Below, in pieces: positions 4,896 through 51,611 of a stretch of 64,000 bases of DNA (its first letter is position 1; each line of letters begins with the position of its first letter). The stretch is from Rebecca billardiae RCC1528 (taxonomy: Eukaryota; Protista; Haptophyta), in the NCBI GenBank assembly GCA_965240325.2, contig OZ251222.1, forward strand, positions 3,472,001 through 3,536,000. The letters run 5' to 3'. A program made the position numbers and the translations under genes. Under the pieces are notes generated by a model, which had not been told where the DNA came from, ran no database searches, and worked only from the letters and a program-made list of their open reading frames with translations.

Positions 4896-6979
4896 ATGCG
4901 CGGCGGCGGCGACGATGGCGGCGGCGGGCTGGGGGGCGGGAAAGGTGGCGGTGACGGCGGCGGCACAGGCGGCGGCGACGACGGAGGCGGCGGCGACGAT
5001 GGCGGCGGCGGGCTCGGCGGCGGGCTCGGCGGCGGCGAGGGCGGCGGCGGCGGCGGCGGCGACGGCGGGGGAGGCGGGCTCGGCGGCGAAGGCGGGGGGA
5101 ATGGGTCGAATTGAGGCGGCGGTGGGCTGGGAGGAGGCGACGGCGGCGGCGACGGCGGCGGCGACGGCGGCGGGCTCGGCGGCGGCGACGGCGGCGGGCT
5201 CGGCGGCGGGCTCGGCGGCGGCGACGGCGGCGGCGATGGCGGCGGGCTCGGCGGCGGGAATGGCGGCGGCGGACTCGGCGTGACGAACGGCGCGCTCACG
5301 ATCGCGCTGAGCGGCACGCTGATCGGCGCGCTGAGCACGCGGAGCGGCACGCTGAACGGCGCGCTGAACGGCACGCTGAGCGGCACGCTGAGCGGCACGC
5401 TCACCGGCACGCTGAGCGGCACGCTGAGCACGCTGAGCGGCACGCTGAGCGGCACGCTGAGCGGGAGCGACACCGGCACGCTGAGCGGCACGCTGAGCGG
5501 GAGCGACACCGGCGCGCTGAGCGGCACGCTGAGCGGGAGCGACACCGGCGCGCTGAGCGGCGCGCTGAGCGGCACGCTGAGCGGGAGCGACACCGGCGCG
5601 CTGAGCGGCACGCTGAGCGGGAGCGAGACCGGCGCGCTGAGCGGCACGCTGAGCGGGAGCGAGACCGGCGCGCTGAGCGGCACGCTGAGCGGGAGCGAGA
5701 CCGGCGCGCTGAGCGGCACGCTGAGCGGGAGCGAGACCGGCGCGCTGAGCGGCACGCTGAGCGGGAGCGAGACCGGCGCGCTGAGCGGCACGCTGAGCAC
5801 GCTGAGCGGCGCGCTGAGCGGCACGCTGAGCACGCTGAGCGGCGCGCTGAGCGGCACGCTGAGCACGCTGAGCGGCACGCTGAGCGGCACGCTGAGCGCG
5901 CTCAGCGGCACGCTGAACGGCGCGCTGGTCGGCAAGCTGATCGAGATGCTGAGCGCAAGGCTGATCGGCAGCGACATGGGCATCGAGATGGGCACCGACA
6001 TCGGCTCCGACACGCCTGCGAAGCTGAACTCGAGCGGGAGCGACATGGCCGCGGAGAACGCGAAGGAGCCGACACCGCCGAGCGACACGACCGACATCGG
6101 CGAGCCCTCCGCCGCGACGCGCTCGAGCTGCCGCTGCGCCTCGTCCGAGTGGTGGTGGTGGTGGCGCTCGCGGAGCTGGCGGTAGCTCGGCTGCTGCTCC
6201 CAGAGGTCGTACACCATCGTCTCGAGCTGGTGCTTCGCGTCCGCCGTGACGCCCATCGCGTTGTCCGCGTCGTCGTCCGCGTTGACCGGCGGCGCCGCCA
6301 TCTCCGGCGTGTACGTCGCGCCCGCCGTGCCTCGCGCGTGAGCGATGGCCGCGTCGACCCGGTGGACGCCGAGGCCGGCCCGGTCGTCGGCTGCCCGCAC
6401 CTCCCACTCGCAGTCACGCGCGCTCGCGCCCGCCGAGCGCGCCCACTCGCCCCCGTTGCCACCAAGGACGCTGGCTGCACGCACGAGCGTGTGGCCCTTC
6501 GTTGCGGCCGGCACGCCGCACACGTCCCAGCCGAGGCCCGGGTCGGGGCCGAAGTCGCCGACGCAGTCCACGAGCTCGTACTTCTCCCGCGTCCCGCGCG
6601 CCAGGCACAGGCCGTCGTTGCCGTTGGACAGGTACGGGTGCGTCATATCCGCGCGCGACAGGATCGCCTCATCAGCCGCGGGATGCGCGATGACAAAGAC
6701 GGCCCCGGGTGCGAGAGCGGCACCGGCAGGCAGATCCTTCCAGTACTCGAACTCGCCCGGGCGTGTGGCACCGTTCACCACGCTGGGCAGCCCGTACTCC
6801 GCCAGAGGCGCAGGTGCAGAGCCCACGTTTGCAATCTCCACATAGCGGTTGCTCGCGCTGCCATCGCTCACCTCGGAAATGATAAGGTGCGCACTCCGCG
6901 ACTCCGCGGAGTCCGAGGACGCCGCGGCCAGCGCGAAGAGCGCAGGCGCCAGCCACACGCTCCCGCGGCGGCGCCACAT
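1..6979 (-). CDS. Giant secreted protein, 3'-partial, >2,326 aa: signal peptide, lamin-tail domain (LTD), SxPL repeats, poly-Pro stalk, ~50 GCxDxxAxN(Y/F)...DDGSC repeats
   Basis: Absent from the ORF track, probably because it runs off the window edge. ATG at 6979 gives MWRRRGSVWLAPALFALAAA, then LIISEVSDGSASNRYVEIANVG...SNGNDGLCL...LVDCVG (LTD-like, ~6890-6365). The same frame was confirmed at 5281 (VSAPFVTPSPPP) and at base 4 (ENFDATATV). Confidence 0.88.
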   Translation of the reverse strand, partial: MWRRRGSVWLAPALFALAAASSDSAESRSAHLIISEVSDGSASNRYVEIANVGSAPAPLAEYGLPSVVNGATRPGEFEYWKDLPAGAALAPGAVFVIAHPAADEAILSRADMTHPYLSNGNDGLCLARGTREKYELVDCVGDFGPDPGLGWDVCGVPAATKGHTLVRAASVLGGNGGEWARSAGASARDCEWEVRAADDRAGLGVHRVDAAIAHARGTAGATYTPEMAAPPVNADDDADNAMGVTADAKHQLETMVYDLWEQQPSYRQLRERHHHHHSDEAQRQLERVAAEGSPMSVVSLGGVGSFAFSAAMSLPLEFSFAGVSEPMSVPISMPMSLPISLALSISISLPTSAPFSVPLSALSVPLSVPLSVLSVPLSAPLSVLSVPLSAPLSVLSVPLSAPVSLPLSVPLSAPVSLPLSVPLSAPVSLPLSVPLSAPVSLPLSVPLSAPVSLPLSVPLSAPVSLPLSVPLSAPLSAPVSLPLSVPLSAPVSLPLSVPLSVPVSLPLSVPLSVPLSVLSVPLSVPVSVPLSVPLSVPFSAPFSVPLRVLSAPISVPLSAIVSAPFVTPSPPPPFPPPSPPPSPPPSPPPSPPPSPPPSPPPSPPPSPPPSPPPSPPPSPPPPQFDPFPPPSPPSPPPPPSPPPPPPPSPPPSPPPSPPPPSSPPPPSSPPPVPPPSPPPFPPPSPPPPSSPPPRIGCTNPVADNYDSLAFLLPSPTTCARNASDPSWVAPPECCILPVFGCINSTALNFNPTATAEPLDGVSPCVFPVIGCTDSWARDYNPRADTYDSCFPYTLGCTDSDAINYDPVADTDDGTCDYYIDGCTSPTACNYDPSATVLDGTCDFTSCKGCTVSTAANYNADASVDDGSCQYFGCTSPTATNYNPSANRFQPGLCTFPRFGCTDTAATNYEPLATVSTDTCLIPGCNSPIATNYDPSATVNDGNCTFLIRGCTDSMARNFRSDAAENDGTCEYDIAGCTASLAINFNPNATVYDGTCVFATVGCKVTSALNYNPTADIADNTQCVFPVPGCLNPVATNYNPSATFQPTTVQCVLPRPGCTDPTALNFNSRATVDDGSCIQVILGCTDPTAINYNPSANTLRAGSCSRVIYGCTLTNAINYRSDATVNQGCVLPTVGCMSPRASNYNPLATIDDGSCTYPVDGCTNSEALNYYPVATIDDGSCVIDFPGCLSPAATNYNPTATTDDASCVFPVIGCTDSTARNYRPLATVNFGCIPTVRGCTRKSATNYNPLANVDDGSCIIPIYGCRNTRALNYNPAATRDFLASSGQSCIIPGCTDSAAFNFQPSATVNDGSCVPHVIGCQDPVAVNYLPTATKGGIQCRYAGCTDSTAINFVQRASIDDGSCQYQTTSGVVMSIAQRRQCTVRAINLGGEVVGTGSSNVNGQYNLIYTGSKGNAYLEVPPSLNCRDIINSQSLTYTMRAPIDSSVISPLTTSYMGLRDLALTHSEANAELQACLDFSTTVDVTTYRPLQQYLREVEAGATLRPLSFAVIRAMAIVAELLRRMDSLFTIYSDRTTVNQATLQWLHDRCTSSTGSIIAGVLDDPTTMAAQVVQIRNLIGLSVGNSPPAGQLSDAGQRFAERVQDLDAVWSAPPSALIPAEARARAIAAWRSAREVHLRRLQGEDPVIVPAATCFNAELQVTYLTTVCPISGCIDPSADNFDQSATIDDQSCVISGCTYLNATNYDNRANRNDGSCVYDIFGCLDPVASNFNSNATAQGSETCTYDIIGCTDSTARNYNNLATRAPSGCGGASPPTTCCRASVLGCVDPTAANFNSLANQNDGSCVDAVSGCADSLADNFDSTANIGVPELCLYASCVDPTADNFDSTANLDDGSCQYLVRGCTNPAASNYDSAATVLESGSCVFPGCTIPGSQNFDSSATEDDGSCAGEILGCTDSRAANYESLATADDGNCAYLGCTLSVALNFDSTATDNDGSCQYPKFGCTDSNSISFVSTADTNDGSCQFAGCRDSLAQNYDSTANVNNAGSCTYLIAGCTDPGADNYDSLATTDDGSCEITGCLNPLAGNYNSLATISSGNCINLAITGCLDPEAANYNSAATISSECVYFGCLNPIAFNYDSTATASDGFCVLPVLGCTDPSADNYDSGANVDQGCIYRGCLVSTCSLYNPTATVSSGVCGVCTVSGCTDPTAENFDSSANTDDGSCIVLGCTDALSTNYNSLATDDDSSCIPEVIGCSIITADNYDSSVTLLDASSCIFRGCLSPSATNYDSTANTGSSTCEFAVVGCTDTEAVNFRPDATVDSGLCQYVGCTNPAASNYDPTASVLTGCEFDFPGCTNTAAENFDATATV
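5290..5930 (-). repeat. Coding minisatellite with 12-nt and 36-nt units encoding SVPL/SAPL/SAPVSLPLSVPL
   Basis: Tandem gctgagcggcac units and near-perfect 36-mers gagaccggcgcgctgagcggcacgctgagcgggagc. Confidence 0.92.
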
Positions 6980-36683: not shown

Positions 36684-39600
36684 ATGGCTCCGCCGCGAGG
36701 CAACGGCGCGGTGGGCCCTCGACCCGGTGCTGCCGACGAGGGCCTCGAGCTGAACCGCCGTGAACCAAAAGTCCACGGTAGACTGGTGCATCGGCTGCCG
36801 TCCAGCCGTGGCCGTCGGGCGCTCGCAGCGCTCACGGTCCTCGCCGCCATTGTCATCGGGGCGCAGGGCCAATTGCCGCCGGCCGCGGGGCCGCTCCCGC
36901 CGCCGAGCCCGCCGCCGAGCCCACCGCCGAGCACGCCACCGAGCCTGCCGCCGTCCCCGCCCGAGACAGTGGCGTCGCTCACGCGCATCTCGCCCACCGA
37001 AGGCGGCTTTGTCGGCCCTGCCGCTCTTTCTGGGCAGTTCTTCGGGCACACGCTCGCGCCGCTGGGCGACTTTGATGGCGACGGTGTGCCCGACGTGCTC
37101 GTGGGCAGCAGCAGCGGGTTTGGCGAGGTATTCGTGCTGCTGCTCAACGCCAGCGGCACCGTAAAGGCAGACACGAAAGTGGTCGTCGACGGCAGCATTT
37201 GGCTGGGCATTGGTCTGGATGCGCTCGGCGATGTGGACGGTGACGGCGTGACCGACATCATGGCCGGCGATTTTGTGGACGCTGGTGCCGGTCGCGGCGC
37301 GGCGTATGTGCTCTTCATGCACGGCAACGCCACCCTCAAGGCATCGAGCAAGATCTCGAACACAGAGGGCGGGCTGAGCTATGCCCTGCAGGATTTGTAC
37401 AGGTTCGGCTCGTGCGTCGCAGGCCTCGGAGACCTTGACGGCGACGGCGTGCCCGATGCGCTGGTGGGTATGGGGGGTGCGAGTAGCGTGGCCGTGCTCT
37501 TCCTCGACAGAGACGGCACCGTCAAGTCGGAGGTCGTGCACAACATCACGTCGATTGACGCGGCTGGCACGCAGTCCGCTTTGCTCGGCGAAGGCTGCGC
37601 CTCGCACGGCGATCTCGACGGCGACGGCGTGACCGACGTGATGGTCGGCGCGAGCGGCGACACCGACGGTGGAGCCGAGCGCGGCGCCGTGTACACGCTC
37701 TTCCTCCGCACCGACGGCACGCTCAAGCGTGTGCAGAAGGTGTCGGCGACTGCCGGAGGCGGCGTGACAGGGCTCGACCGGGTAAGTGGCTTTGGGTTCT
37801 CCGTCTCTGCCGGGCAGGACGTTGACGGCGACGGCATCACCGATGCGCTCGTCGGGGCTCCGAACTACGACGGGAACACGGGCGCGGCGTTCGTGCTCTA
37901 CCTCCGCAGGGACGGCACGGTGCGCCAATCTGAGCTGATCACCAACGGGACGCAGGGCTTCGGCTCGCCGCTCTCGGCGGACGACTTCTTCGGCTCCGGC
38001 GCGGCGCTGCTCGGCGACCTCGACGGCGACGGGCTGGCGGATGGCGCGGTGAGCGCGCAGAAACTTCAGACGGTGTTCATGCTCGAGCTTGGTGCACGCG
38101 TCCCGCCCGCGAGCCCACCGCCACCGAGAGCGCCGCCAAGCTCGCCGCCGCCGAGCCCGCCGCCGAGCCCGCCGCCGAGCCCGCCGAGCCCGCCCCCCTC
38201 GCCGCCCGAGATGGTGGCGTCGCTCGCGCGCATCTCGCCCACCGAAGGCGGCTACGTCGGCCCTGCCTCGGCGGGCACGTTTGGGTACACGCTCGCGCCG
38301 CTGGGCGACTTTGACGCCGACGGGGTGCCCGACCTGCTCGTCGGCACAAATAACCCCCGCGGCGAGCTGTATGCGCTGCTGCTCAACGCCAACGGCACCG
38401 TCAAGCGGGACACGAAGCTCGCCATCGCCGGCAGTTTCTGGCTGGGCATCGGCATGGATGTGCTCGGCGACGTTGACGGCGACGGCGTGGACGACATCAT
38501 GGCCGGCGACATACTGGACTTCGGTGGCGGCGGCAGCGCTCGCGGTGCAGCGTACGTGCTCTTCCTCCACGCCAACGCCACGCTCAAGGCGTCGAGCAAG
38601 ATCTCGGAGACAGGGGGCGGGTTGAGCCACGCCCTCCAAGACTCGGGACTTTTCGGCTCGTGCGTCGCAGGCCTCGGCGACCTTGACGGCGACGGCGTGC
38701 CCGATGCGCTGGTGGGCGAGTGGGGGACCGAGAGCGTCCTTGTGCTCTTCCTGAACAGCGACGGCACCGTCAAGTCGGAGGTGGTGCACAACGTGACGTC
38801 GATTGACCCGTCTGCGCTTTCATCGTCCTGGTTCGGCAGGTCGTGCGCCTCGCACGGCGATCTCGACGGGGACGGCGTGACTGACGTGATGGTCGGAGCG
38901 AACGGCGACAACGTCGGAAACCTCGGCGCCGGCGCCGTGTACACGCTCTTTCTGCGCATCGACGGCTCAATCAAACGCGTGCAGAAGGTGTCGTCGAACG
39001 CGACGGTGGGGGGCGCGGTGGAAGGGCTCGACCAGGTGAACATGCTCTTCGGGACCTCCGTCTCTGCCGGGCAGGACGTTGACGGCGACGGCATCACCGA
39101 TGCGCTCGTCGGGGCTCCAAACTACGGCGGGAAGACGGGCGCGGCGATGGTGCTCTACCTCCGCAGGGACGGCACGGTGCGCCAATCTGAGCTGATCACC
39201 AACGGGACGCAGGGCTTCGGCTCGCCGCTCTCGGCGGACGACGCCTTCGGCACCGGCGCGGCGCTGCTCGGCGACCTCGACGGCGACGGGCTGGCGGATG
39301 GCGCGGTGAGCGCACCGGGCGATACGACTGTGTACATGCTTGAGCTTGGTGCACGCGTCCCGCCCGCGAGCCCACCGCCACCGAGGGCGCCGCCGAGCCC
39401 GCCGCCGCCGAGGGCGCCGCCGAGCCCGCCGCCGAGCCCGCCGCCAAGCCCGCCGCCGAGCCCACCGCAGAGCCCGCCACCATTGCCGCCACCGTCGCCC
39501 CCGCCTGTCCCACCGCCACTGCCACCGCCCTCGCCACCACCGCGCCCGCCGCCGAGCCCGCCGCCGAGCCCGCCGCTAAGCCCACCACCATCACCTCCTC

Positions 39601-42600
39601 CAGACCCACCGCCGGTTCCGCCGCCGAGCCCGCCGCCAGGCCCGCCACCACCACCGCCTCCGTCGCCCCCGCCGTCGCCCCCGCCATCGCCGCCGCCATC
39701 GCCGCCGCCATCGCCGCTGCCATCGCCGCCGCCCAGCCCACCACCGAGCCCGCCTCCGTCGCCACCGCCGTCGCCGCCACCGGCGGCCTCGCCACTGCCG
39801 CCGCCGTCCCCGCCCCCTCGGCCGCCGCCGAGCCCGCCGCCATCACCACCGCCCTCGCCTCCTCCGAGTCCACCGCCACCAGGCGCACCGCCCTCACCGC
39901 CACCAAGCCCTCCGCCCAGCCCGCCGCCCTCGCCACCGCCGGCACCGCCGCCGCCACCGAGGGCGCTGCCCTTCCCACCGCCGAGCCCACCTGCGCCGCC
40001 GCCCAGCCCTCCGCCCAGCCCGGCTCCGTCGCCACCGCCGTCGCCGCCGCCGGCGGCCTCGCCGCTGCCCCCGCCGTCCCCGTCTCCGCGGCCGCCGCCG
40101 AGCCCGCCGCCGTACACACCGCCATCGCCGCCGCCATCGCCACCGCCGTCGCCACCACCGGCGGCCTCGCCACTGCTGCCGCCGTCCCCGCCCCCTCGGC
40201 CGCCGCCGAGCCCGCCGCCATCCCCACCGCCCTCGTCGCCGCCCTCGCCGCCGCCCTCGCCGCCGCCCTCGCCGCCGCCCAGCCCACCACCGAGCCCGCC
40301 TCCGTCGCCACCGCCGTCACCACCACCGGCGGCCTCGCCACTGCCACCGCCATCACCGCCGCCTTCGCCGCCGCCGAGCGCGCCACCGTCACCGCCGCCC
40401 TCGCCTCCACCGAGTCCACCGCCACCAGGCCCACCGCCCTCGCCGCCACCCAGCCCTCCGCCCAGCCCGCCGCCCTCGCCACCGCCGGCACCGCCGCCGC
40501 CACCGAGGGTGCAGCCCTTCCCACCGCCGAGCCCACCCGCGCCGCCGCCCAGCCCTCCGCCGAGCCAGCCGCCTCTGCCGCCGCCGAGCCCGCCGCCTGC
40601 GTCGCCACCGCGTCCGCCGCCCTCGCCGCCACCAAGCCCACCACCGCCGCAGTTGCCGCCGACACCACCGCCAACCCCACCGCCGAGCCCTCCGCCCATC
40701 GCGCCGCCCAGCCCCCCGCCGACTCCGCCGCCGAGCGCGAATGGGTCGTCGCCGCCGCCGCCGCCGCGGCCGCCGCCGCCGCCGCCAGCCGCGCCGCCTC
40801 GGCCTCCGCCGAGCCCGCCGCCGGCCCCGCCGCCACCCTCAGCGCCCCCGAGCTCGCCGCCTGCGCCGCCTCCGCCCGCGCCTCCGCCGAGCCCACCGCC
40901 GAGCAGGCCGCCGCCGCCGCCGCGCACAGAGCCCTTCCTGCCGCCGCGGCCGGCGCCGCCGCCCCCGCCGCCTGGAGCCAAGACGTTCGTCGCCCTCACG
41001 ATCGCGGGCAGCGTGGAGGACATGCAGGAGGATTCGCGCGAGGCCGTGCTGGGCGGCCTGTCGCGGCTGACGGGCGTGCCTCGGCCGAGCTGGCGCATCG
41101 AGGCGGTGAGCTCTGCGTCGGTCGAGGTGGTAGCGAGCGCGCTGCAGGCCGAGGACGGCGCGGCGCAGGTGGACGTGGTGGGGGCGCTGGCGAACGCGAC
41201 GCTGGAGGAGCTGAGCGCCGAGCTCGGCGTCGAGGTCACAGCCGCCCCGACAGAGCGCTTCGCCGGCTGCACCGACGCCGACGCGACCAACTTCGACTCG
41301 AGCGCGACGTTCGACCCCGAGCCTTCGGGGTGCGTCTACTTGCTTCCGCCGCCGCCGAGCGCGCCGCCGTCGCCGCCGCCGTCGCCGCCGCCGTTGCCGC
41401 CGCCGCCGGCGTCGCCGCCGCTCAGCCCGCCGCCGCCCGCGCGCGTCAACACGACGGTGTACCGTGTCGAGCTGCCGCTTGCGTCGCGCATCGTCGTCGG
41501 CGTGGGCGAGGAGCTCCGCTTCGAGGGGCACGGCGTCGCTGACGGTGACCGCGCGCGCTGGGTGCGCGCGGGGGCGACGGCGTGCGCCGGCGAGTCATCC
41601 GCGGGCTACGGAGGCACGCGGGTGCTGACCGACGGCGGGCGCGCGAGCTTCACGCCGACGCTCGCCGGCGCGGGCCTGCAACTGTGCTACGCGCACACGG
41701 GCACGTCGAGCGTGGAGCCGTTCGTGCTCTACCCCGCGATCACGCTCGACGCCATCGCCGTGCGCACGCCCGTGTCCGCGCTCGGCGTCGTCGGCACGCG
41801 CAAGACGGTTTGGTTTGGCGGCGTCGGGCTGCGCGAGGGCGACCGCGCGCACTGGGCGCCTCGCAACGGCACGGCCGTCGACTGCGAGCGCGAGGCGCCG
41901 CGCGCGGGCCTTGGTGGCGAGCAGGCGCTCGACGCGAACCTCTCGGCGACGTTCGCGCTCGCCGAGGCGCACGCCGCCACACACCTGTGCTACACGCACG
42001 CCGGCAAGCCGCGCGTCGCGTACGCGGGCGTCTCGCTCGCGTCGGCGCAGCTACGCGCGCCGACGTCCGCGCTCGCGGTCGCGGGCGCGGTGGAGACGCT
42101 CGCGCTGGAGGGCGTGGGCGTCGGCGCGGGCGACACGGGCTTCTGGGTCGTCGCCGCCGAGGCGTGCACGCCGGGCACGCGCGCGGGCGAGGGCGCCTCC
42201 GCCGAGTACGGCGGACTCTGGACGGTGGGTGCGGACGGGACCGGCTCGTTTGTCGTCTCGGCCGCGGCGTGCTCGAGCGCGGGCGCGTCGTGCCCCGCCT
42301 TGTCGCTGTGCTACCGATTCGGCGCCGAGCCGTTCGTGCACTACCCCGACGTCACGCTCGAGACGTTCGCGCTCTTCGGGATCCGCAGCGAGCCGCGCAC
42401 GCTCGCCGGCTCGGCGCTCCGGGTTGGCTTCGACGGCTTCGGCGTGAGCAGCGCGGACGCGGCCTTCTGGGTGGCCGCGGGCTCGGGCGGGTGCGACGGC
42501 GGCGCGCGGCGCGCGCTGGGCGGCGCGCAGCCCGTCTCGAGCGGCGCGCTCGAAGCGAGCTTCACCTTCTCGCGCGGGCAGGGCGGGCTCGCGCTCGAGC

Positions 42601-45600
42601 TCTGCTACCGCTTCACACCCGCCAAGCCGTACACGCACTACGCCCACCTCACGCTCGACGTGGTGGAGGTGACGGGGCCACTCGCCACCGTCGCCGTCGA
42701 GCTGCAGCCAGAGACGGTCGTCTTCGAGGGCCCCGGCGTGGGCGCGGGCGACCGCGCGTACTGGGTGCCCGCGAGCGCGGCGGAGTGCGACGAGGGGCGC
42801 TCGGTGAGCGGCCCGCCGACCAACGTGAGCCTGGGCGCACGCGCCACCTTCACCCTCGGCGCCGTCGGCAGCGGGCTCAAGTTGTGCTACCGGTTTGCGC
42901 GCGCGGCCGGAGGCGCCGAGCTGCCGTGGGCGATGTGGCCGAGCGCCAGCCTCTCCGTCACCTACCCGGAGGACCCGTTCGCCAACGCGCGGGTGGAGCG
43001 CGTCACGCCCACCGGCGCGGCGGTCGGCGAGCCGACGCAGCTCACCGTCCACGGCTCCGGCTTCGGCGCCGCCGCCGCCAACCGCGACCGCATCAAGTGC
43101 GTGTTCGGCGGCGAGACCGTCGTCGGCGTGCGCGCGATCACGCACACGCGCATCGAGTGCCCCGTGCCCATTGGCGCCGAGGCCGGCACGACGAGCCTCG
43201 AGCTGCTGGCGAACGAGAGCGTGCCGGCGGCGGACGGCACGCCGCGCGCGCGCGAGACGATAGGGGTGCTCGGCGCCTTCTCGTACTTTGATCTGTCCGC
43301 GGTGCGGCTCACGCAGCTCCGGCCGCCGGGCGGGCCCCAGGGCACGGCCTCGCTGGCGCTCACGATCAGCGGCGCCAACTTTGCCGACTACGGCGGGATC
43401 AGGGTGCGCTTCGAGGGGCGAGGCGACGTGGCGGCGACGATGCCCGACGCGGGCGTGGACGCGGTGCGCTGCGTCGCGCCGTACGTCTCGCCCACGCGCG
43501 CGCCCGGCCGCCTCAACGTGTCCATCTCTCTCAACGCCGGCGGCTCGTTCAGCTCGGCCTCGCTGCCCTTCGAGTTGTACACCGCCACCGTCTCGTCGGG
43601 CGTGCCCGCCGGCCTCCCGCGCGGCGCGGCGGGCGCGGGCCTCGCGGCGACGGTGACGCTGCTCGGCACTGGGTTCGTCGACCTCGACGGCGCGGCGCGG
43701 TGCTACTTCTCGCCGCTCGCACCCACCGGGGTGCCCACGGGCGCCGCCGCGCGCGGCTCGAGCGCGCGCGTCGTCTCGCCCACGCGCGCCGAGTGCGACG
43801 CGCCCGCGGGCGCGGCGGCCGGGGCGTACGAGGTGCGCCTGTCGCTCAACGGCATGAGCCGCGTGCCCAACTTCTTTGACGGCGTGCGCCTCACGCTGTA
43901 CGACATGGCGGCCGTGAGCGTGCGCGCGCTCGTGCCGCCCGGCGGGCCCGTGCGCGGCGGCACCGTGCTCACCGTGCTCGGCTCGGGCTTTGCCGAGTAC
44001 GGCGGCGGCGGCGGCGCGGCGCCCTCGCTGCTCTGCTGCTCGTTCGGGCGCAGCGGCGGGTGCGACGCGGCCGCGACGCTCCTCGACTCGACGCGTCTCC
44101 TGTGCACCACGCCCGAGGCGGCGGGCGCGGCGCCGGCCAACACGACCGTCGACGTGACGCTCAACGGCGGCGCGCCAGCCTCGACGACCGACGCGGGCGT
44201 GCGCTTCGTGTTCTACGACGAGCCGCGGCTGGCGCGCGTCGAGCCCGCGCTCGGCGACGCGAGCGGCGGCACGCTGACCACGATCACGGGCGAGGGCTTT
44301 GCGGCGCTCTCGCGCGAGCGCGTCGGGTACGGCGCCGACCCTTCGTCCTTCCTGCGCGTGCGCTTCGGCCCGACCGTCGCCGAGCCGCCGATCTCGTTCA
44401 GCGACCGCGAGATTGTGCAGCCGGCGAGCTACGGCCAGCAGGGCGCGGCGAGCGTGGAGGTGAGCCTCAACGGCCAGCAGTACAGCCCGGTGGCGCTCGC
44501 GTACCGCTTCGTCGGCCTGCACCGCCCCGACGTCGTGTCCGCGCGCTTCAACGACGCCGCGACGACGCTGATCGTGCAGTTCGACGCGCAGCCGACGAAC
44601 CGCGCGGGCATGAGCGGCGTCGCGCCGTGCGCGCGCGTGCTTGACGCGCCGACGGTGGCGCTCATCCGCGGCGACGGCGCCGCCGAGCCGCAGTGCTACT
44701 GGGAGGACGACTCGACGCTCGTCGCTCAGCTGAACTCGCGCACGCGGCTCTCGGCCGGCAGCGCCGTCTCTCTGCGCGACCACGTCATCTGGCCCCTCGG
44801 CTTTGGGCGCACGTGCCCGGGCGAGGCGGAGTGCGGCGTGGGGCTGGGCGCGACGATCGACGTTGACTTCCCGTGCGCCGCGTGCGTGCGGCCAGTCGCT
44901 GCGCTCGTCGCGCCCACTCTGATCTCGAGCTGCCCGGACGCGGTGATACGGCTGGACGCGTCCGCGTCCTCTGGCGGCGGCATCTGGCCGCTGCAGTACA
45001 CGTGGCGCGTCGACCCCGCCCTCTCCGACATCGCCGACGAGCTGAACGCCGCGCTCGCGCTCCTGCCCTCCGATCGCGCCGTGCTCGAGATCCCGACCGA
45101 CCTGCGGCTGGGCGCGCCGCTCGCCCTCGCGGGCGAGGGCTCGCAGTACGTGTTCCTGCTGCGCGTCTCCTCGTTCCTCGGCCTGCGCTCGGAGGTGGTG
45201 CGCTGGGCCGTCACGCGCTCGGGTGGTGCCAGCCCGAGCCTTGTGATCGACGGGCCGTACCGGCTGACCGTGCGGCCCGCCTCGGAGGTGCTGCTCGTCG
45301 GCAGCGCGGAGCTCGCCGCGTGCTGGCCCGCCAATGGCTCGGGCGCGATCGACTTTGCGTGGGCGGCGACCAACGCGAGCGTGAGCGCGACGGGCGCGCT
45401 CGCGCCTCACCTGCCGCTGCCCGCGCTCGCCGAGCCCAACCAGCCGTCGCTGCTGCTCGGCGCGTTCACGCTCGCGCCCCTGCACACGTACGAGCTCGAG
45501 CTGCGCGCGTGGATGCGCGCACACCCGCACGCGCGCGCGAGCGCGAGCGTGCTGCTCGTCGTCGAGGCGCAGCCGCTGCAGGCCGTGCTCGCGGGCGGCG

Positions 45601-48600
45601 ACCGGCGCGTGAGCTCGGAGGCTGAGCTCGTGCTCGACGCGTCGGCGAGCTACGACCCGAACGTGCCGCTGGTGCCCGACGCGGCGACGGGCGAGCCCGC
45701 GCGCGACGCCGAGCTGCGCTTCGAGTGGAGCGCGGCGCTGCTGAACGGCACGGCCGCGCGCGAGGTCGCGCTCCCAGACGGCGTGGACGGCAGCGCGCGC
45801 GCGCTGCGCATCCCGCGCGGGGGGCTGGGCGTGGGCAGCTGGACGTTCACGCTCTCGCTGTCCAAGGAGGGCTCGGCCGCGCCGCCGGTGGCCGCGTCGA
45901 TCGGCGTGGAGGTGGTGCCCGGCCCCGTGCCCGCGATCACGTTCGCCCCGCTGGACGCGCTCAAGTACAACCCGAGCTGGGCGCTCTCCACGCAGCGCGT
46001 CGCGCTGCAGACGTCGCTAGACGCGCGCTCGGCCGCGCTCGAGGCGAGCGGCGCGCTCTCGCTCGAGTACGAGTGGAGCGCGGCGACCGTCGTCTCCGGC
46101 GTGGAGCGCGCCGCCGAGCTCGACCTCCGCTCGGACGCAATCACAACGACGGGCGCCGACCAGCCCTCCCTCGCCTTCCGCTCGGGCGCGCTCACGCCCG
46201 GCGCGCTCTACGCCTTCTCTCTCACCGTGCGCGGCGCCGAGCAGCCGGCGTTTGCGCGGGTGCGCGTGCTGATCAACCGCCCGCCGTTCGGCGGCACGCT
46301 GCTCGTCGTGCCGAGCGAGGGCGTCGCCGTGCTCGACGAGTTCTTGCTCGAGGCGCGCGCGTGGACGGACGACGCGGAGGACCTGCCGCTGCGCTACGCG
46401 TTTCAGTACGCGCCGCGCGGCGCCGCGGGCGACGGCGCCGAGTCCGCCGCCGCCGAGGGCGCGCCGGCGCAGGCGCTGTCCGAGCTCGTGCGGTCGCCCT
46501 CGCTCGCCGCGTTCCTGCCCGCGGGCGAGCTGCTCGCCTCGGTCGACGTGCTCGACTTCTACGGCGCGCGCGCGTCGGCCTCCGCCGCCGTCTCCGTGCG
46601 CGAGCCCGCCGCCTCCGAGCTGTTCAGCATCGCGGGCGCGCTCTCGCGCGCGCGCGAAGCCGTGGACGTGGGCGCAGCGTCGCGCGCCAACCAGCTCGTC
46701 TCGTCGGTGGCGACGCTGCCCGGCCTCTTCGAGCGGGCGGCGGGCGGCGCGAACGCGTCGAGCGCGCTCGTGCACGAGATGCTGGCGATCGTCGACGGCG
46801 CGGACGAGCGCACGATCTCGACCGCCACCAGCCGCAAGCAGTCGAGCCGCACGCTCGCGGCCGTGCTGAGCCACCCGGCTGCGCTCGACGGCGCTGCGCA
46901 GGCGCGCGGCCTGCTGCAGGTCGAGCGGCTCGCGGGGCGCGCGGGCGGCACCGGCCTCGACGCGTCGACGTCGGCCAATCTGCTCGACGCGATGGACGCC
47001 GTGCTCGCCGCAGACGTCTTGGCGCTGCCGCCCGACGAGCGGGACGAGGTCAACAGCGCGGCGGGGAGCGCCGCGGCGCAGCTGGCGCGCTCGCTGCTCG
47101 TTGGACTCGTGCGCGACGAGGCGGCGGCAGAGGCGCTCGGCGAGAACCTCAACGTCTCCGCGAGCCGGCGCTCGCCGTCCGCGCTGGCGAACGCGACGAT
47201 CCGTGGGCCCGGCGGCGCCGGCGGCGTGGACGTGCCCGCGAGCGCGCTCGCCAACCGCGCGGCCGTCGCGGCGGGCGTCGACGTTGTCATGTTTGCATTC
47301 GCGCGCAACATCCACGGCGACCCTTCCGACCAGCCTGCCGCGCCGTCGGGCGGCGACGCGGGGAGCACGCTGGGCGCGCTGCGCACGGGCGTGCTCTCGG
47401 TCACGCTCGGCGCCGCCGCGTCGGGCGAGGAGCTGTCCATCCGCAACCTGAGCGAGCCCATCGTCATCGCCATCCCGCTGGCTCCCGCGCCGCCGTCGGA
47501 GGAGGCGGAGGAGGCGGAGCAGCAGCAGCAGCGCGCGGCGGGCTGCGCGCACCTCAGCGGCTGCCACGCCACCGCGGGCCGCGGCACGTGCGTCGAGGGC
47601 GCGTGCGCGTGCCACCGCACGTACTCCGGCGAGCGGTGCACGCTGCGCGCCGCGTGCCACTTCTGGGACGCGAGTGCGCAGCGCTGGTCGACCGAGGGGT
47701 GCGAGACGCTGCCCAGCGCGGCGCAGCCGCTGCCCGCCGACGCCGAGCCGTCGCTGCTGTACTGCGCGTGCGACCACCTCACCGACTTTGGCGGCATCTC
47801 CGTGCCCGCCACGCCCGAGGAGCTGGCCGACGACTCGGAGTCGTTCGCGCGCGGCGTGAACACCATCTCGGCGGGGGACGCGAAGGAGGCGCTCCTCGTC
47901 TCGCCCGAGCAGCTGGGCGCGCGCATCGAGCGCAGCCCGCACATCTACGCGCTCATCCTCGGCATGAGCGGCGCGTGCGCTCTCTCCGTCCTCGCCTTCT
48001 GCGCGCGCGACCGGTACGAGGCGAGCGAGCGCGCCAGGCACGCGGCGGCCGCCAAGCAGGCGGCGGCGGAGCAGGAGCGCCTGCGCGCGCTGGCCACCGT
48101 GACCGCCGAGCTCGAGCTCAAGCTCGACGAGATGGACGAGGCGATGGCGCGGCGCGCAGAGCAGGCGGCCATCATGATTCAGAAGGTGGCGCGCGGCCGG
48201 CTCGTGCGCAAGCAGGTCCGCGCGCTCTTCGACTTTGCGAGCGGCACGCGGCGCGAGCGGCGCGGCGAGCACGCGTGCACCAAGGTGCTGCGGCTCGTCC
48301 TGCAGCGCATCGGCACGGACCACTCGCTCTTCGGAATGTGCGCGCCGCGCGCGCGCGCGCGCGCGCGCGCCCCGCTGCTGAGCGCCCCGCCGCTGAGCGC
48401 GCGCGCGTCGCCCGCGCCGCTCGCCCCGCCGCGCGCGCGCCCTTCAGCTGGTTTGGCGACCCGGCCGAGTCGAAGCGCTCGGAGCTGTGCCAGCAGTTCT
48501 GGACCCTGTGCATGCTCGCGCTCGTGATCGAGTGCGTGCTCTGGGCCGACCCGACCGGCGGCGCCCGCACCGTCGACGCGCTCGCGGTCGTGTACACAGG

Positions 48601-50874
48601 CGTTGTCACGGCCACGCTGTGCATGCCTGCGCTGCTAGCGTGGCGCGCGCTGTACACGTGGGGTTACTCGCGGGACTCGCCGCTCGTCGAGCGCTTCGGG
48701 CAGGCGCTGCTCGGCGGCGCGCGGGCGGAGGTGGACTCGCAGCTGGCGAGCCGTGCCAAGCCCGAGGTGAAGGAGGCCATCGAGCAGGACGCCTCCGCAA
48801 AGGGCGCCAGCCTGCGCGCACCGCTCGCGCCTCCCATGTCACCCGCGCGCGGCACGCGCGGCGGGCGCTGGGGAGAAGCAAGCGCGGGCGGCGGCGCCGG
48901 CATGGCCGAGGGGTCGGGGCGCGGCACGCCGGTGGCGCAGTCGCCAGTCTCGCCGTACCGCGGCGCTCGGCCGTCGCGCCCCGACCGGTGGGCGCGTCCA
49001 GGCCGGCCGTCGGATCCCGGCGCCGCGGCCGACGGCGCCGCAGACGCGCCGCCGGGAGCCGAGCCGCCCGCCGCGCCGCCCGCCGCGCTCGCTCGGGCTG
49101 GGCGCGTCTTGCCCACGCCCACCTCCGCCGGGCGGAGCGCTGCCAGCATGCCGTTCAGCCCGTCGCGCGCCGTCGTCCGCCCGCCGCTCGTCGCGCCGCG
49201 CCCCCCTGCCGCCGCCGTGCACCCGCAGCCCGCCACTCCGCCCTCACGCTGGGCGTGCGTCTCTCCGGAGGAGGCGGCAGATCTCGATCTGATCGACGAG
49301 CCGACCGCGCGGCTCGTGCCGGACTTTGCGCTGGACGAGCCCGCCGACGCGGGCGCGGCGCCGGCGGGGCAGGAGCCCACGCGCGCCGACGCCCGGCCAG
49401 CGGGTGCTCGCGCGGAGCGCCAGGCCTCGCCGGCCTCCGCGCGCGAGCCCACGGAGGCAGCCGCGCGCTCGCTCACGCCCGGAGCGGGCTGGCCGCCGGG
49501 CGGCGTGCGGCAGCGCTGCGGGGCGGACGGCACGGCGCTGCCCTCCCGCCCGCCGCCTCCGGGCGAGAGGCCGCCGTTGCCCCCGCCACCCGCGCCGCCT
49601 GCGCCCACGCCACCGCCGGCGACGCCCCCCGCGGCCGCGCACACCGAGAGGGGTGGCGGCACCCCCGAGCCCGCCGGCCAACGCGCCGTGCGGTGGGCGA
49701 GCGCCCAGCGCTCCGGCGGCGCGCCCGCGACCTCCCCTGCCGAACTCGGCTCGCGACGACGGCCGCCGCCGCCGACGCCGCCCGCAACGAGCGGCGGCGG
49801 CCGAGGTGGCGCCGCGGCCGGGCGCAAGGGCATCGTGCGCACCGTGCTGACGGGCTCGCCGCAGAAGGTGGCCAGGGCGATCAAGCACAAGACGAGCGGC
49901 TGGCGCTCGGAGCGGCGGCAGCAGCTCCTTTCCCTCGACGCCGTGCAGCACGACCTGGACGAGCAGACCGTGCGCCAGCTGCGCGCCAAGTTCGTCAAGT
50001 ACGACCGCGACGACTCGGGGTACGTGTCCACGCACGAGCTGGGGCAGCTGGTGAAGGACCTCGGCTTCACGCTCTCGAGGCGCAAGCTGGGGCAGCTCGC
50101 CAACGAGCTCGACGAGTCCGGGAACGGCAAGATCACGCTGCCCGAGCTCGGTGCGCAGCGCAGCGGCGCGACGCCTCACGCCGTGCGCCTTGCCCCTCAC
50201 GCGCGCGGCCACGCTCGAACCCCCCCCCCCCCCCCCCCCCTCCGTCCCCCGACCGAACCCCCCCCCCCCCCCCCCCCCCCCTCCGTTCCCCGACCGGTCA
50301 CGGCCCTGGCGTGCACGCGCCGCCCCTCGCAGTCTGGTGGTACGATGGCGTGGTGAAGGAGGCGATCTGGCGCGAGGCGCGCCGCCAGAAGGGCTGGCGC
50401 AAGCAGTGGGCGCGGCTTCAGCCGTACGTCACGCCGCCGCCACTCGTCAAGATCGCCATCGCATGGCTTGTGATGTGGGCCTGCTTTGCCGCGCTCGCAG
50501 CCATCGCGATCACGTTCGCGTTTGTGTTCGGCCCAGAGCGCACGAGGCTGCTGCTGTTCTCCTGGACCTTTGCGGAGGGGCAGACGCTCTTCCTCGAGGT
50601 GCGCGAGCGCGAGCGCGCGCGACGGTGCGCTTGTCAGCGTTGCTACGCGCGCGCGCGCGCTCACACGGCGCGCCGATGCATGGCCCATGCTCGTGCCGCG
50701 GCCGAGCAGGAGCCGCTGATCATCGCGATGACCATCGTCCTGCCCTACGTCATGGACGCGCTCACTGCGAACGGCGTGATCGGCGAGGTCTTCAACGAGG
50801 TCTTTGCAAACGTGGTCGGGGCAGTCGTCGCCAGCTTCAAGTCGGGCGTGCAGGCCATCACCGGCGGAGCCTGA
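36684..50874 (+). CDS. Giant receptor-like protein (~4,595 aa): signal peptide, 2 FG-GAP propellers, Pro stalk, 5 novel repeats, IPT/TIG domains, REJ, EGF, GPS, ~5 TM, IQ, 2 EF-hands; exons 36684-48337, 48448-50150, 50333-50598, 50710-50874
   Basis: FG...GDLDGDGxxD repeats; GPVRGGTVLTVLGSGF (IPT); LDASASYDP and INRPPFGGTL...WTDDAEDLPLRYAF (REJ); CHFWD...WSTEGC...CACDHLTDF (GPS); IQKVARGRLVRK (IQ); DRDDSGYVSTHEL and DESGNGKITLPEL (EF-hands). Three GT-AG introns give a 13,788-nt CDS. Confidence 0.9.
36960..39385 (+). repeat. Internal tandem duplication (~1.25 kb) of the FG-GAP propeller
   Basis: Copies at ~36960-38125 and ~38205-39385. Their 3' thirds are nearly identical at DNA level. Confidence 0.92.
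39360..40980 (+). repeat. Extensin-like (SPPP)n coding region (~540 aa)
   Basis: Translation PPSPPPSPPP with repeated AASPLPPPSPP sub-blocks. Confidence 0.95.
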
Positions 50875-51611
50875 GGGCCACGCCGGCGTGCCGGCGGCCG
50901 CGGCGTTGGCCGCGTTCCAACTCCAAGGCCATCGCTCGTCCGGCGGCGGTCATCATTGTCAGCAGGTGATGCAATAACGACCCGTCTATCCGCCGGGCAG
51001 TCGCTGCTATGTCACGTAATGACGACCGAGGAACGCTATAGGCGCCAGCGCTGCACATTATCAGGTCGATCATCATAAGTCCCATCGCTCTTCATTACAG
51101 CAGTACCAGCAGGCAGCAGACCATCGCCACGCACACCTCAAACTCAGTAGTCTCACAGGGCTGCTCTTGGACTACTGTACAAAGCTAAAGGGTCCGCCGC
51201 CATCCTGCATCCATTCGCGGCGGGTTATTTTTCTGAATTCTGTCTCATGCTGACTCTGATGCTACTGCTGGCATGCAGCGCCGTCTGACGCGCGCTGTTT
51301 TCTGTCTGCTACTGCTGGCAGCGCCGCTGTCATACGACGATCGCGACGACTACGGTGATTACGAGTCCATCCACAAGGGACTAGTAGCATCAGTGAATTC
51401 ATATTCACGGACTGTCAGTGTCACTCGGTCTCGGTGTGCTGTCACTCGCGTCGATCAGTCAGATCACAGATGGCACGACGCACAAGGCAGCTGGTATGGC
51501 CTCGTCGCCGGTCGTGCTCGCACCTCGCAGACACGAGTGCGGGCCGGAGCCTCCAGCAGCATGACCCGATGCCATCGCCGCACCGGCCTCTGCTGTCTGT
51601 CTGTCATCTGC

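What the first reader, a model, noticed from the sequence alone, without database searches (positions are those of the whole stretch)
36684..50874. Integrin-alpha-propeller / polycystin-1 chimeric receptor with built-in calcium sensors and no channel
Seen: one gene encodes two FG-GAP propellers, a ~540-aa SPPP stalk, IPT domains, REJ, EGF, an intact GPS site (HL|T at 47775-47783), about five TM helices, an IQ motif after TM1 and two EF-hands in a later loop. Known: polycystin-1 has REJ-GAIN/GPS-TM1-PLAT-TM2-5 plus six channel-like helices, and FG-GAP propellers are integrin-alpha ligand-binding heads. Here PLAT is replaced by a coiled coil plus IQ and the protein ends after about TM5. Inference: an autocleaved adhesion or mechanosensory receptor regulated by Ca2+/calmodulin, possibly acting with a separate PKD2-like channel on flagella or haptonema. 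I know of no described protein with this architecture.
Basis: partly seen in the sequence, partly recalled or inferred. Interest (0 to 1): 0.85.

Follow-up and report, generated by a model that had tools for sequence, protein, structure and literature searches.

The report
Stalked polycystin-1-like receptor without channel
One gene of a GC-rich alga, probably a pavlovophyte, encodes a 4,595-residue surface receptor with two calcium-binding propeller heads on a proline rod, anchored by the front half of a polycystin-1-type protein that has its own calcium-sensor motifs and no ion-channel half; it belongs to a large, unpublished family.

Summary
A four-exon gene (36684-50874, + strand; three GTGCGC...CAG introns) encodes 4,595 aa. 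In order, it has:
- a signal sequence
- two duplicated FG-GAP units
- a ~595-aa Ser-Pro rod
- five unassigned ~100-aa 'LCY' repeats
- IPT/TIG domains, REJ, and an EGF-like module
- a GAIN domain with HL|T exactly at 47775-47783
- TM1, an IQ motif, TM2-3, a calmodulin-lobe-like EF-hand pair, and TM4-5, then a stop.

No PLAT or channel half occurs here or in the 12 homologues examined that keep the C-terminus, so being channel-less is a family trait.

'Integrin-alpha' overstates the head: its nearest relatives are bacterial FG-GAP arrays.

The architecture is not unique. The base module is deposited as hypothetical proteins from Pavlovales. This scan had already noted many paralogues on other DNA of this genome, with different heads, some of them FG-GAP. 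No paper describing it was found.

Function is inferred. No RNA run was listed.

The parts
36684..48337 (+). Exon 1 (aa 1-3884 plus 2 nt), ATG at 36684
   Evidence: Stop-free frame. Donor aat|GTGCGC. The join is confirmed by homologues reading ...H[ST]xLG[LI]WFGD....
36819..36875 (+). Hydrophobic signal sequence or anchor (aa 46-64, ...IGAQG|QL)
   Evidence: Kyte-Doolittle peak of 1.84. Cleavage is not tested.
36966..38126 (+). FG-GAP unit 1 (six FG-GAP repeats, each with a D-x-D-G-D-G loop)
   Evidence: Pfam FG-GAP 2.7e-24, 6 stretches. Loop positions.
38217..39398 (+). FG-GAP unit 2, a tandem duplicate of unit 1
   Evidence: 78.8% aa and 85% nt identity to unit 1; dN/dS 0.47.
39399..41183 (+). 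Ser-Pro3 extensin-like rod, about 595 aa (61% Pro, 16% Ser)
   Evidence: Translation and composition. A relative (L002) also has a stalk of at least 500 aa at this position.
41265..41339 (+). Single 'GCTD...NFD...GC' Cys motif after the rod
   Evidence: The same motif is at the same position in P0002.
41451..42938 (+). Five ~100-aa 'LCY' repeats (G.GV..GD.A.WV...C...LCYRF), family unassigned
   Evidence: repeats also in P0001/2/3/11/28. No Pfam match.
42951..44781 (+). IPT/TIG region (about 600 aa, at least 3 recognised TIG domains)
   Evidence: Pfam TIG 8.8e-26.
45471..46622 (+). REJ domain
   Evidence: Pfam PF02010 1.6e-37.
46641..47807 (+). GAIN domain: helical subdomain A plus beta subdomain B, with the EGF-like module inserted at 47544-47639
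   Evidence: AF2 pLDDT 88.3. Foldseek hits: BAI2 1.4e-10, BAI3, latrophilin, CELSR1, GPR126. EGF-like Cys pattern.
47775..47783 (+). GPS cleavage triad H-L|T (CACDHL|TDFGGISVP)
   Evidence: H, L and T are invariant in 26 aligned family sequences. The strand after T is the last beta strand of the model.
47949..48005 (+). TM1
   Evidence: Hydropathy 2.12. Helix in the model.
48162..48221 (+). IQ motif (IQKVARGRLVR) on the long cytosolic helix that stands where PLAT is in PC1
   Evidence: Pfam IQ 20.8 bits. Conserved in most family members. No PLAT hit.
48338..48447 (+). Intron 1 (110 nt, GTGCGC...CAG)
48448..50150 (+). Exon 2: TM2 (48485-48553), TM3 (48569-48637), a 446-aa Ala/Pro/Arg/Gly-rich loop, and the EF-hand pair
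49976..50146 (+). EF-hand pair (loops DRDDSGYVSTHE and DESGNGKITLPE)
50151..50332 (+). Intron 2 (182 nt, GTGCGC...CAG, with two poly-C runs of 21 and 24)
50333..50598 (+). Exon 3: the helix leaving EF-hand 2, TM4 (50452-50520), and the first part of the TM5 helix
50599..50709 (+). Intron 3 (111 nt, GTGCGC...CAG). Its position is shared with relative P0026, which reads through an intron at this point.
50710..50874 (+). Exon 4: the nearly invariant E-P motif, the rest of TM5 (to 50769), a short amphipathic tail, and the TGA stop
   Evidence: In 12 of the 13 homologues with both a TM2-3 and a TM4-5 match, the match runs to within 7-31 aa of the C-terminus.

Best explanation
This is an intact, single four-exon gene for a 4,595-aa surface receptor. 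It belongs to an expanded family of 'head on a pole' polycystin-1-like receptors in a probable pavlovophyte, for which I found no publication.

Shown by sequence and predicted fold:
- The ectodomain carries two duplicated Ca2+-loop FG-GAP units at the tip of a ~595-aa Ser-Pro rod. If the rod is a polyproline-II helix it is roughly 0.18 micrometre long (my estimate at 0.31 nm per residue).
- Below the rod come five LCY repeats, IPT/TIG domains, REJ, and a GAIN domain with a canonical HL|T site.
- The membrane part corresponds to the TM1-TM5 front half of polycystin-1. PLAT is replaced by a long helix carrying an IQ motif. A calmodulin-lobe-like EF-hand pair sits close upstream of TM4; in the homologue model its exit helices lead almost straight into TM4. 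The protein stops after TM5.

Inferred:
- The protein cleaves itself at HL|T, and the two fragments stay together.
- Binding or pulling on the propeller head is passed down the rod to the GAIN domain, which exposes or releases the TDFGG... strand and changes the 5-TM base.
- Cytosolic Ca2+ is read by the EF-hand pair and by calmodulin (or the receptor's own EF-hand lobe) on the IQ helix. This sets or feeds back on the receptor's state.
- Output would go through a separately encoded partner, not through a pore of its own.
For: Gene model and product. Domains. HL|T at 47775-47783 and invariant across the family. GAIN fold of the window's own sequence: pLDDT 88.3; BAI2 1.4e-10 and seven further adhesion-GPCR GAIN entries below 1e-5.

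Family: 1,691 relatives at E<=1e-3. Thirteen of the 150 listed have both a TM2-3 and a TM4-5 match, 10 of them also with an EF-hand match; 12 end 7-31 aa after TM5. IQ, EF loop and CxCxHLTxF are conserved. Homologues confirm exon joins 1 and 3. No PLAT or PKD_channel was found in this gene, in 13 relatives scanned, or in three downstream ORFs. Both head units are under constraint (dN/dS 0.47).
Confidence: 0.6

Rival explanations
1. Mainly an adhesin or surface-coat protein. The propeller heads on a glycosylated rod mediate cell-cell, cell-prey or cell-substrate adhesion. The 5-TM base is only an anchor, and the GAIN site serves as a force-limited release (shedding) point rather than a signalling switch. 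The EF-hand and IQ elements would govern trafficking or turnover.
For: The layout (globular head, Ser-Pro rod, membrane anchor) parallels Hyp-rich rods such as the Chlamydomonas mastigoneme protein MST3, which is tethered by a polycystin-type membrane domain (PMC11015965). The same genome carries many paralogues with other binding heads (lectin, LRR, RCC1), according to the scan's unchecked notes. Head duplicates diverge fairly fast (dN/dS 0.47).
Against: A single helix would be enough for anchoring. The five helices, the IQ motif and the EF-hand loops are conserved across relatives only about 30-40% identical overall, which argues for a function in the base itself.
Confidence: 0.22
2. Split polycystin. 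The 5-TM base assembles non-covalently with a separately encoded TRP/PKD2-like channel protein, or a channel-half protein. This would rebuild a PC1/PC2-like complex from separate genes, and the EF-hand and IQ elements would gate that channel.
For: The base matches the PC1 region that precedes its channel-like half. Splitting polycystin folds between genes is documented for MST3 plus SIP plus PKD2 in Chlamydomonas (PMC11015965).
Against: My word searches of the scan's notes for this genome found no PKD2-like gene; the only TRP channel noted is an ankyrin/EF-hand TRP with a plastid-type presequence. That is weak evidence either way. I ran no co-fold or co-expression test.
Confidence: 0.13
3. Mis-joined reading. 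The FG-GAP head and rod are one gene, and REJ-GAIN-5TM is another. They would appear continuous only because a proline-codon tract keeps frames open, or because of a mis-assembly in the repeat.
For: There is no RNA evidence. None of the 150 nearest relatives has an FG-GAP head. The head's nearest relatives are bacterial.
Against: The same frame runs through head, rod and base with no stop for 3,947 codons, and no other + strand ORF of 80 aa or more lies within the rod except a 109-aa one. There is no start codon with a signal sequence after the rod. Relative L002 also has at least 500 aa of rod directly upstream, in frame with its LCY-TIG-REJ part. The scan's notes describe other FG-GAP-headed paralogues in this genome (unchecked).
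Confidence: 0.05

Closest known systems
Human polycystin-1 (PKD1; PDB 8z6b chain A)
   Same: REJ domain, GAIN/GPS with HL|T just before TM1, and a five-helix N-terminal membrane domain. The top fold match is to residues 3063-3610. A long cytosolic loop lies between TM3 and TM4.
   Different: There is no PLAT in loop 1 (an IQ helix instead), no TOP domain, no S1-S6 channel-like half and no C-terminal coiled coil. An EF-hand pair sits in loop 3. The ectodomain is FG-GAP plus Ser-Pro rod plus LCY plus TIG, not LRR/WSC/lectin/PKD repeats. Sequence similarity in the TM part is undetectable.
Sea urchin REJ proteins (SpREJ1-10; PMC1934368)
   Same: REJ + GPS proteins with 1 to 11 TM segments. SpREJ1 and SpREJ2 lack the large TM domain, and half of the family lack PLAT. 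Channel-less REJ receptors therefore have precedent.
   Different: Those have one or two TM helices or the full eleven, not five. They have lectin or PKD-repeat heads, and no rod, IQ or EF-hands.
Ectocarpus Esi0130_0068 (PMC4700764)
   Same: An algal REJ + GPS protein with only 6-7 predicted TM helices. It is specific to male gametes and proposed as a gamete-recognition receptor.
   Different: It is 1,427 aa with no head or rod, and no IQ or EF-hands are reported. Its relation to the 5-TM module was not tested here.
Diacronema lutheri KAG8462819.1; Pavlovales sp. CCMP2436 KAJ1636386.1 and KAJ1633484.1 (deposited as hypothetical, 'EF-hand domain-containing' or 'REJ domain-containing' proteins)
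   Same: The same base module: TIG/REJ, GAIN with HL|T, TM1, IQ-type helix, TM2-3, EF-hand pair, TM4-5 with the SW...EP motif, then the end.
   Different: They are 32-37% identical over the REJ-GAIN part and 40-47% over EF-TM5. KAG8462819.1 starts at a signal peptide followed directly by TIG and KAJ1633484.1 begins at the REJ region, so as deposited they lack an FG-GAP head, rod and LCY repeats. I found no publication on them.
Chlamydomonas MST3 / SIP / PKD2 mastigoneme anchor (PMC11015965)
   Same: A very long Hyp-rich polyproline-II rod with extracellular binding domains, held in the membrane by a polycystin-type domain. Seven further Chlamydomonas proteins combine large ectodomains, poly-Pro regions and incomplete PKD domains.
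   Different: MST3 uses the PKD2-like channel half, completed by SIP. This protein uses the other part, the GAIN plus TM1-5 front half of PC1. The lineage is different (a green alga).
Adhesion GPCRs (BAI2/3, latrophilin, CELSR1, GPR126)
   Same: GAIN domain fold with a GPS. Large modular adhesive ectodomains. The tethered-agonist logic may apply.
   Different: The base has five helices of PC1 type, not a secretin-like 7-TM bundle. No G-protein coupling element was identified.
Bacterial tandem FG-GAP surface proteins (Planctomycetaceae, Actinomycetota, etc.)
   Same: The head is 33-40% identical to them over 70-90% of its length, with the same Pfam set listed for them (PF01839, PF13517; also PF14312).
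   Different: Those are bacterial secreted or cell-surface giants without REJ/GAIN/TM bases. Two long ones also carry a precomputed REJ hit, but no GPS.

Membership tests
Polycystin-1 / REJ (PKD1) family | REJ domain | tested here: met
   Pfam PF02010, E 1.6e-37, aa 2930-3313.
Polycystin-1 / REJ (PKD1) family | GAIN domain with a GPS (HL|T/S) immediately before TM1 | tested here: met
   GPS 26 bits against a cut-off of 22.5. HLT is invariant in the family. The AF2 model of the window sequence (pLDDT 88.3) matches solved GAIN domains at E 1.4e-10. Actual cleavage was not tested.
Polycystin-1 / REJ (PKD1) family | PLAT/LH2 domain in the first cytoplasmic loop | tested here: not met
   No PLAT hit in the window protein or in 13 relatives. 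Half of the sea urchin REJ proteins also lack it (PMC1934368).
Polycystin-1 / REJ (PKD1) family | N-terminal membrane domain TM1-TM5 | tested here: met
Polycystin-1 / REJ (PKD1) family | TOP domain plus six-helix TRP-like channel half (PKD_channel), followed by a C-terminal coiled coil | tested here: not met
   The protein stops 34 aa after TM5. There is no PKD_channel hit in the gene, in relatives or in downstream ORFs. The C-terminus is conserved in 12 homologues.
Adhesion GPCR | Secretin-like 7-TM bundle after the GAIN domain | tested here: not met
   There are five hydrophobic segments, no 7tm Pfam hit, and the fold match is to PC1, not to a GPCR.
Integrin alpha | Seven-bladed FG-GAP propeller followed by thigh/calf domains, a single TM helix and a GFFKR tail | tested here: not met
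   FG-GAP repeats are present, but only six are recognisable per unit. No other integrin family appears among the Pfam matches. The nearest relatives are bacterial FG-GAP arrays. The blade number was not modelled.
Hydroxyproline-rich (extensin-like) rod proteins | Long Ser-Pro3-4 repeats forming a glycosylated polyproline-II helix | not testable with these tools
   The sequence criterion is met (about 595 aa, 61% Pro, 16% Ser). Hydroxylation, glycosylation and rod shape cannot be tested here.
Pavlovophyte REJ-GAIN-5TM family with IQ and EF-hand (unpublished; deposited as hypothetical proteins) | CxCxHLTxF GPS; TM1; [IVL]QxxxRGxxxR helix; H[ST]xLGLWF...RAEL...ECMLY TM2; TM3; EF-hand pair; TM4; SW...EP TM5; end | tested here: met
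   All motifs are present in the window protein and aligned with the homologues.

The most novel reading that the evidence does not exclude
The GAIN plus 5-TM 'front half' of polycystin-1 is an autonomous, Ca2+-sensing receptor module that exists on its own in protists. Here it carries its own EF-hand lobe and an IQ helix, which might clamp in cis. Animal polycystin-1 would then be a fusion of such a receptor with a PKD2-like channel subunit. In pavlovophytes this module has been used as a universal socket for interchangeable heads held on sub-micrometre rods, forming a modular mechanosensory or recognition system on the cell surface.
Probability: 0.3. Interest if true: 0.8.

Novelty: new variant of a known kind. 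Interest (0 to 1): 0.62.

Why it matters
The role of polycystin-1's TM1-5 domain and of GPS cleavage is still debated, because in animals this domain is always fused to the channel-like half. A natural family has the front half alone, with recognisable Ca2+/calmodulin elements in place of PLAT and in loop 3. That family offers a simpler system for asking what the front half does. It also suggests how PC1 may have been assembled. For algal biology, it points to a large, modular set of surface receptors on long Ser-Pro rods in a haptophyte lineage. Their ligands could be prey, mates, surfaces or bacteria, and all are unknown.

Tried and rejected
1. RNA evidence. The look-up of sequencing runs on 45300-51200 listed no RNA run, so read laying could not be used.
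2. Sequence-level link of the TM part to PC1. Profiles of GAIN-TM3 (A2), TM2-3 (A4) and TM4-5 (A5) against all PDB chains gave only GPS, GPCR-noise or no hits. The whole-module profile was swamped by calmodulin.
3. Foldseek with the 5-TM model, the VIA second look, and the ESM Atlas shape search returned only EF-hand proteins. Only the exhaustive VIA-wide search found PC1.
4. An Atlas feature search for the 5-TM module with EF-hand families excluded gave no usable hit (one search was a format slip).
5. LCY repeats: no Pfam match even at E 5, and only unnamed eukaryotic clusters in the Atlas.
6. Search for an FG-GAP-headed orthologue. Relative L002 has the rod, but its contig ends before any head. 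Two protein searches with the head found only bacterial proteins.
7. Taxon of the more distant GPS-5TM relatives: the cluster look-up gave only unnamed environmental records.
8. Hidden channel exons downstream: rejected (family C-termini).
9. The spliced 4,595-aa product has no reference, so it was never handed to the fold or search tools. I used pieces of the window and natural homologues instead.

Full report
**Observation**

The + strand has a stop-free frame of 3,947 codons from an ATG at 36684 to 48527, in DNA of 74-80% G+C. I estimate about 40 stops would be expected by chance in that span.

Pfam on this translation gives:
- REJ, 1.6e-37
- FG-GAP 3.7e-35 and FG-GAP_3 3.4e-29
- TIG, 8.8e-26
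- GPS, 26 bits against a cut-off of 22.5
- weak EGF-type hits
- an IQ motif, 20.8 bits against a cut-off of 20.3 when the piece is scanned alone.

**Gene model**

After '...TDHSLFG' the frame degenerates into GC-repeat text. Coding sense resumes in another frame. Three introns with identical ends (GTGCGC...CAG; 110, 182 and 111 nt) join four exons: 36684-48337, 48448-50150, 50333-50598 and 50710-50874. The product is 4,595 aa with one terminal stop.

Two of the three joins are confirmed by homologues:
- At join 1, a public-assembly contig that reads straight through the junction (P0001) and 14 other relatives read H[ST]xLG[LI]WFGD...RAEL..FW...ECMLY across it.
- At join 3, the family reads ...LxLE|EPxxI..., and relative P0026 reads through an intron at this very point.

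Exon 2 encodes two hydrophobic helices, a 446-aa Ala/Pro/Arg/Gly-rich loop, and an EF-hand pair (Pfam 4.5e-9). The pair has two canonical loops, DRDDSGYVSTHE and DESGNGKITLPE. Exons 3-4 encode two more helices and a short tail.

Hydropathy gives a signal/anchor segment (aa 46-64) and TM1-TM5. With the N-terminus outside, both the IQ helix (loop 1) and the EF-hands (loop 3) are cytosolic, which is where such motifs work.

**Anatomy of the ectodomain**

- There are two FG-GAP units, each with six D-x-D-G-D-G loops. They are 78.8% identical in protein and 85% in DNA, with dN/dS 0.47, so this is a tandem duplication under constraint. Only six repeats per unit are recognisable. The blade number was not modelled.
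- The rod is about 595 aa, 61% Pro and 16% Ser.
- After a single Cys motif (41265-41339) come five ~100-aa repeats ending in 'LCY[RAT][FH]'. They match no Pfam family even at E 5 and only unnamed eukaryotic clusters in the ESM Atlas. They are a separate, unassigned repeat, and relatives have up to about a dozen of them.

**GAIN domain**

I modelled the window's own residues 3320-3790 with an alignment of 26 family sequences. The model has pLDDT 88.3 and pTM 0.78. It shows a helical subdomain, then a beta subdomain whose last strand begins right after H-L-T.

Foldseek places it with solved GAIN domains: BAI2 at 1.4e-10, then BAI3, latrophilin-1/3, CELSR1, GPR126, GPR110 and CD97. C, W, W, G, C, H, L, T, F and P of the GPS are invariant or nearly so across the family. 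The site therefore looks competent for self-cleavage. Cleavage itself is untested.

**Membrane base**

No reference exists for the spliced protein, so I modelled the same module of the Diacronema lutheri homologue KAG8462819.1 (P0004:1480-2088). It is 37-47% identical to the window protein in these parts. The 28-row family alignment included the window's exon pieces (pLDDT 75.4).

Against this, HMM profiles of TM2-3 and TM4-5 find no PC1 chain at E<=10. Homology of the base therefore rests on fold, order and context, not on sequence.

No PLAT, TOP or PKD_channel domain is found in this gene, in 13 relatives, or in three ORFs downstream.

**Family**

An exhaustive HMMER search with REJ(C-terminal part)-GAIN-TM3 found 1,691 relatives at E<=1e-3 and 33 at E<=1e-30.

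Local searches with pieces of the spliced protein show that 13 of the 150 listed have both a TM2-3 and a TM4-5 match, 10 of them also with an EF-hand match. In 12 of these the match runs to within 7-31 residues of the C-terminus. The IQ-type helix, the first EF loop and CxCxHLTxF are conserved in most.

Named members are from Diacronema lutheri and Pavlovales sp. CCMP2436, plus one MMETSP transcript. They are annotated only as hypothetical, 'EF-hand domain-containing' or 'REJ domain-containing'. More distant environmental members keep GPS and the SW...EP helix but carry a PDZ domain in the loop.

The organism of the window is therefore most likely a pavlovophyte haptophyte. Its own protein is not in the collections searched. 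Being channel-less, and having the IQ/EF-hand elements, are family traits, not accidents of this locus.

**Head**

None of the 150 relatives has FG-GAP repeats. The relative with the longest contig has at least 500 aa of Ser-Pro rod in frame upstream, but the contig ends there.

Searches with the head returned only bacterial tandem FG-GAP surface proteins, at 33-40% identity over most of the query. They come from Planctomycetaceae, Actinomycetota, Latescibacterota and Bacteroidota. 'Integrin-alpha propeller' is thus true only at the level of the FG-GAP superfamily. A bacterial origin of the head is possible but untested.

**What the scan already had**

Word searches of the scan's notes show many other loci in this same genome read as heads on Ser-Pro stalks over a REJ/GPS/5-TM base. 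The heads include lectin arrays, RCC1, LRR, FG-GAP and kringle. Three follow-ups (s1-363204, s1-332035, s1-338727) reached the same family reading. One of them describes three tandem FG-GAP-headed genes and calls the five-helix base novel. My PC1 fold match adds to that. These notes are unchecked AI notes. I used them as context, not as evidence.

**Literature**

- Sea urchin REJ proteins span 1-11 TM segments. SpREJ1 and SpREJ2 lack the large TM domain, and half of the family lack PLAT (PMC1934368).
- Ectocarpus Esi0130_0068 is a male-gamete-specific REJ+GPS protein with 6-7 predicted TM helices (PMC4700764).
- Chlamydomonas MST3 is a Hyp-rich polyproline rod tethered by a PKD2-like domain that SIP completes, and similar proteins with large ectodomains exist there (PMC11015965).
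- For PC1 the stalk is proposed to act as a tethered agonist on the TOP domain (PMC9672506), which this protein lacks.
- Full-text searches found no paper on an FG-GAP/REJ/GPS protein, or on this haptophyte family.

**Mechanism**

Shown: the domain order, the topology logic, the GAIN fold, the PC1-like base (by fold, via a homologue), the conserved IQ and EF-hand elements, and the absence of a channel half.

Inferred:
- self-cleavage at HL|T
- transmission of binding or pulling on the head through the rod to GAIN
- a change in the 5-TM base on exposure of the TDFGG strand
- Ca2+ read-out through the EF-hand pair (in the homologue model its exit helices lead almost directly into TM4) and through calmodulin, or the receptor's own lobe, on the IQ helix
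- output through a separate partner.

Rivals are a mainly adhesive or shedding role, a split-polycystin complex with a separately encoded channel, and a mis-joined reading. They are given with odds in their own sections.

**Verdict**

This is a new variant of a known kind (the PKD1/REJ family), and one member of a large unpublished family that the scan has already met on other DNA of this genome.

Noticed in passing
window 41451-42938; also P0001, P0002, P0003, P0011, P0028: A ~100-aa repeat (G.GV..GD.A.WV...C...GG...F.F...L.LCYRF..PF..Y..V.L.V). There are five copies here and about a dozen in relatives. It has no Pfam match and only unnamed eukaryotic clusters in the ESM Atlas, so it is probably an undescribed extracellular domain.
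   Followed up: partly
window 36966-39398: The FG-GAP head's best matches are all bacterial tandem FG-GAP surface proteins (33-40% identity). No haptophyte homologue was found. This may mean a bacterial origin of the head, or only a database bias.
   Followed up: partly
window 48338-48447, 50151-50332, 50599-50709: All three introns start GTGCGC and end CAG. Intron 1 is largely (GC)n, and intron 2 holds two poly-C runs of 21 and 24. The position of intron 3 is shared with relative P0026, whose called protein reads through an intron there.
   Followed up: partly
L001 9670-9708 (ENA ERZ4290864 NODE_3211): The public contig carrying the closest homologue ends in a Nextera adapter (CTGTCTCTTATACACATCTGACGCTGCCGACGA). 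The last residues of P0001 (...LSLIHI) are therefore adapter-derived, and the protein is truncated at its 3' end.
   Followed up: yes
P0059, P0129 (environmental relatives): More distant EGF-GPS...SW..EP members carry a PDZ domain (one also a weak IQ hit) in the long region between the GPS and the last helices, with no EF-hand match. The region between the helices may be a variable slot for signalling modules.
   Followed up: partly
P0162, P0265 (bacterial giants from the head search): Two bacterial proteins of more than 5,000 aa list both FG-GAP and REJ (PF02010) among their precomputed Pfam hits, together with cadherin and RTX repeats. An FG-GAP plus REJ-like combination may therefore exist in bacteria, without GPS or TM.
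   Followed up: no
window 41265-41339; P0002 aa ~95-120: A single 'GCT[DN]..A.N[FY]D..A.FD...C.Y' Cys motif sits just after the rod in both this protein and P0002. A scan note (s1-336932) reports about 50 'GCTD' repeats in the giant gene at 1-6979 of this window. I did not compare them.
   Followed up: no
window 47784-47948: The segment between the cleavage site and TM1 is about 55 aa. In the model it forms three short helices after the last GAIN strand. From memory, this is longer than the stalk of adhesion GPCRs or PC1.
   Followed up: no
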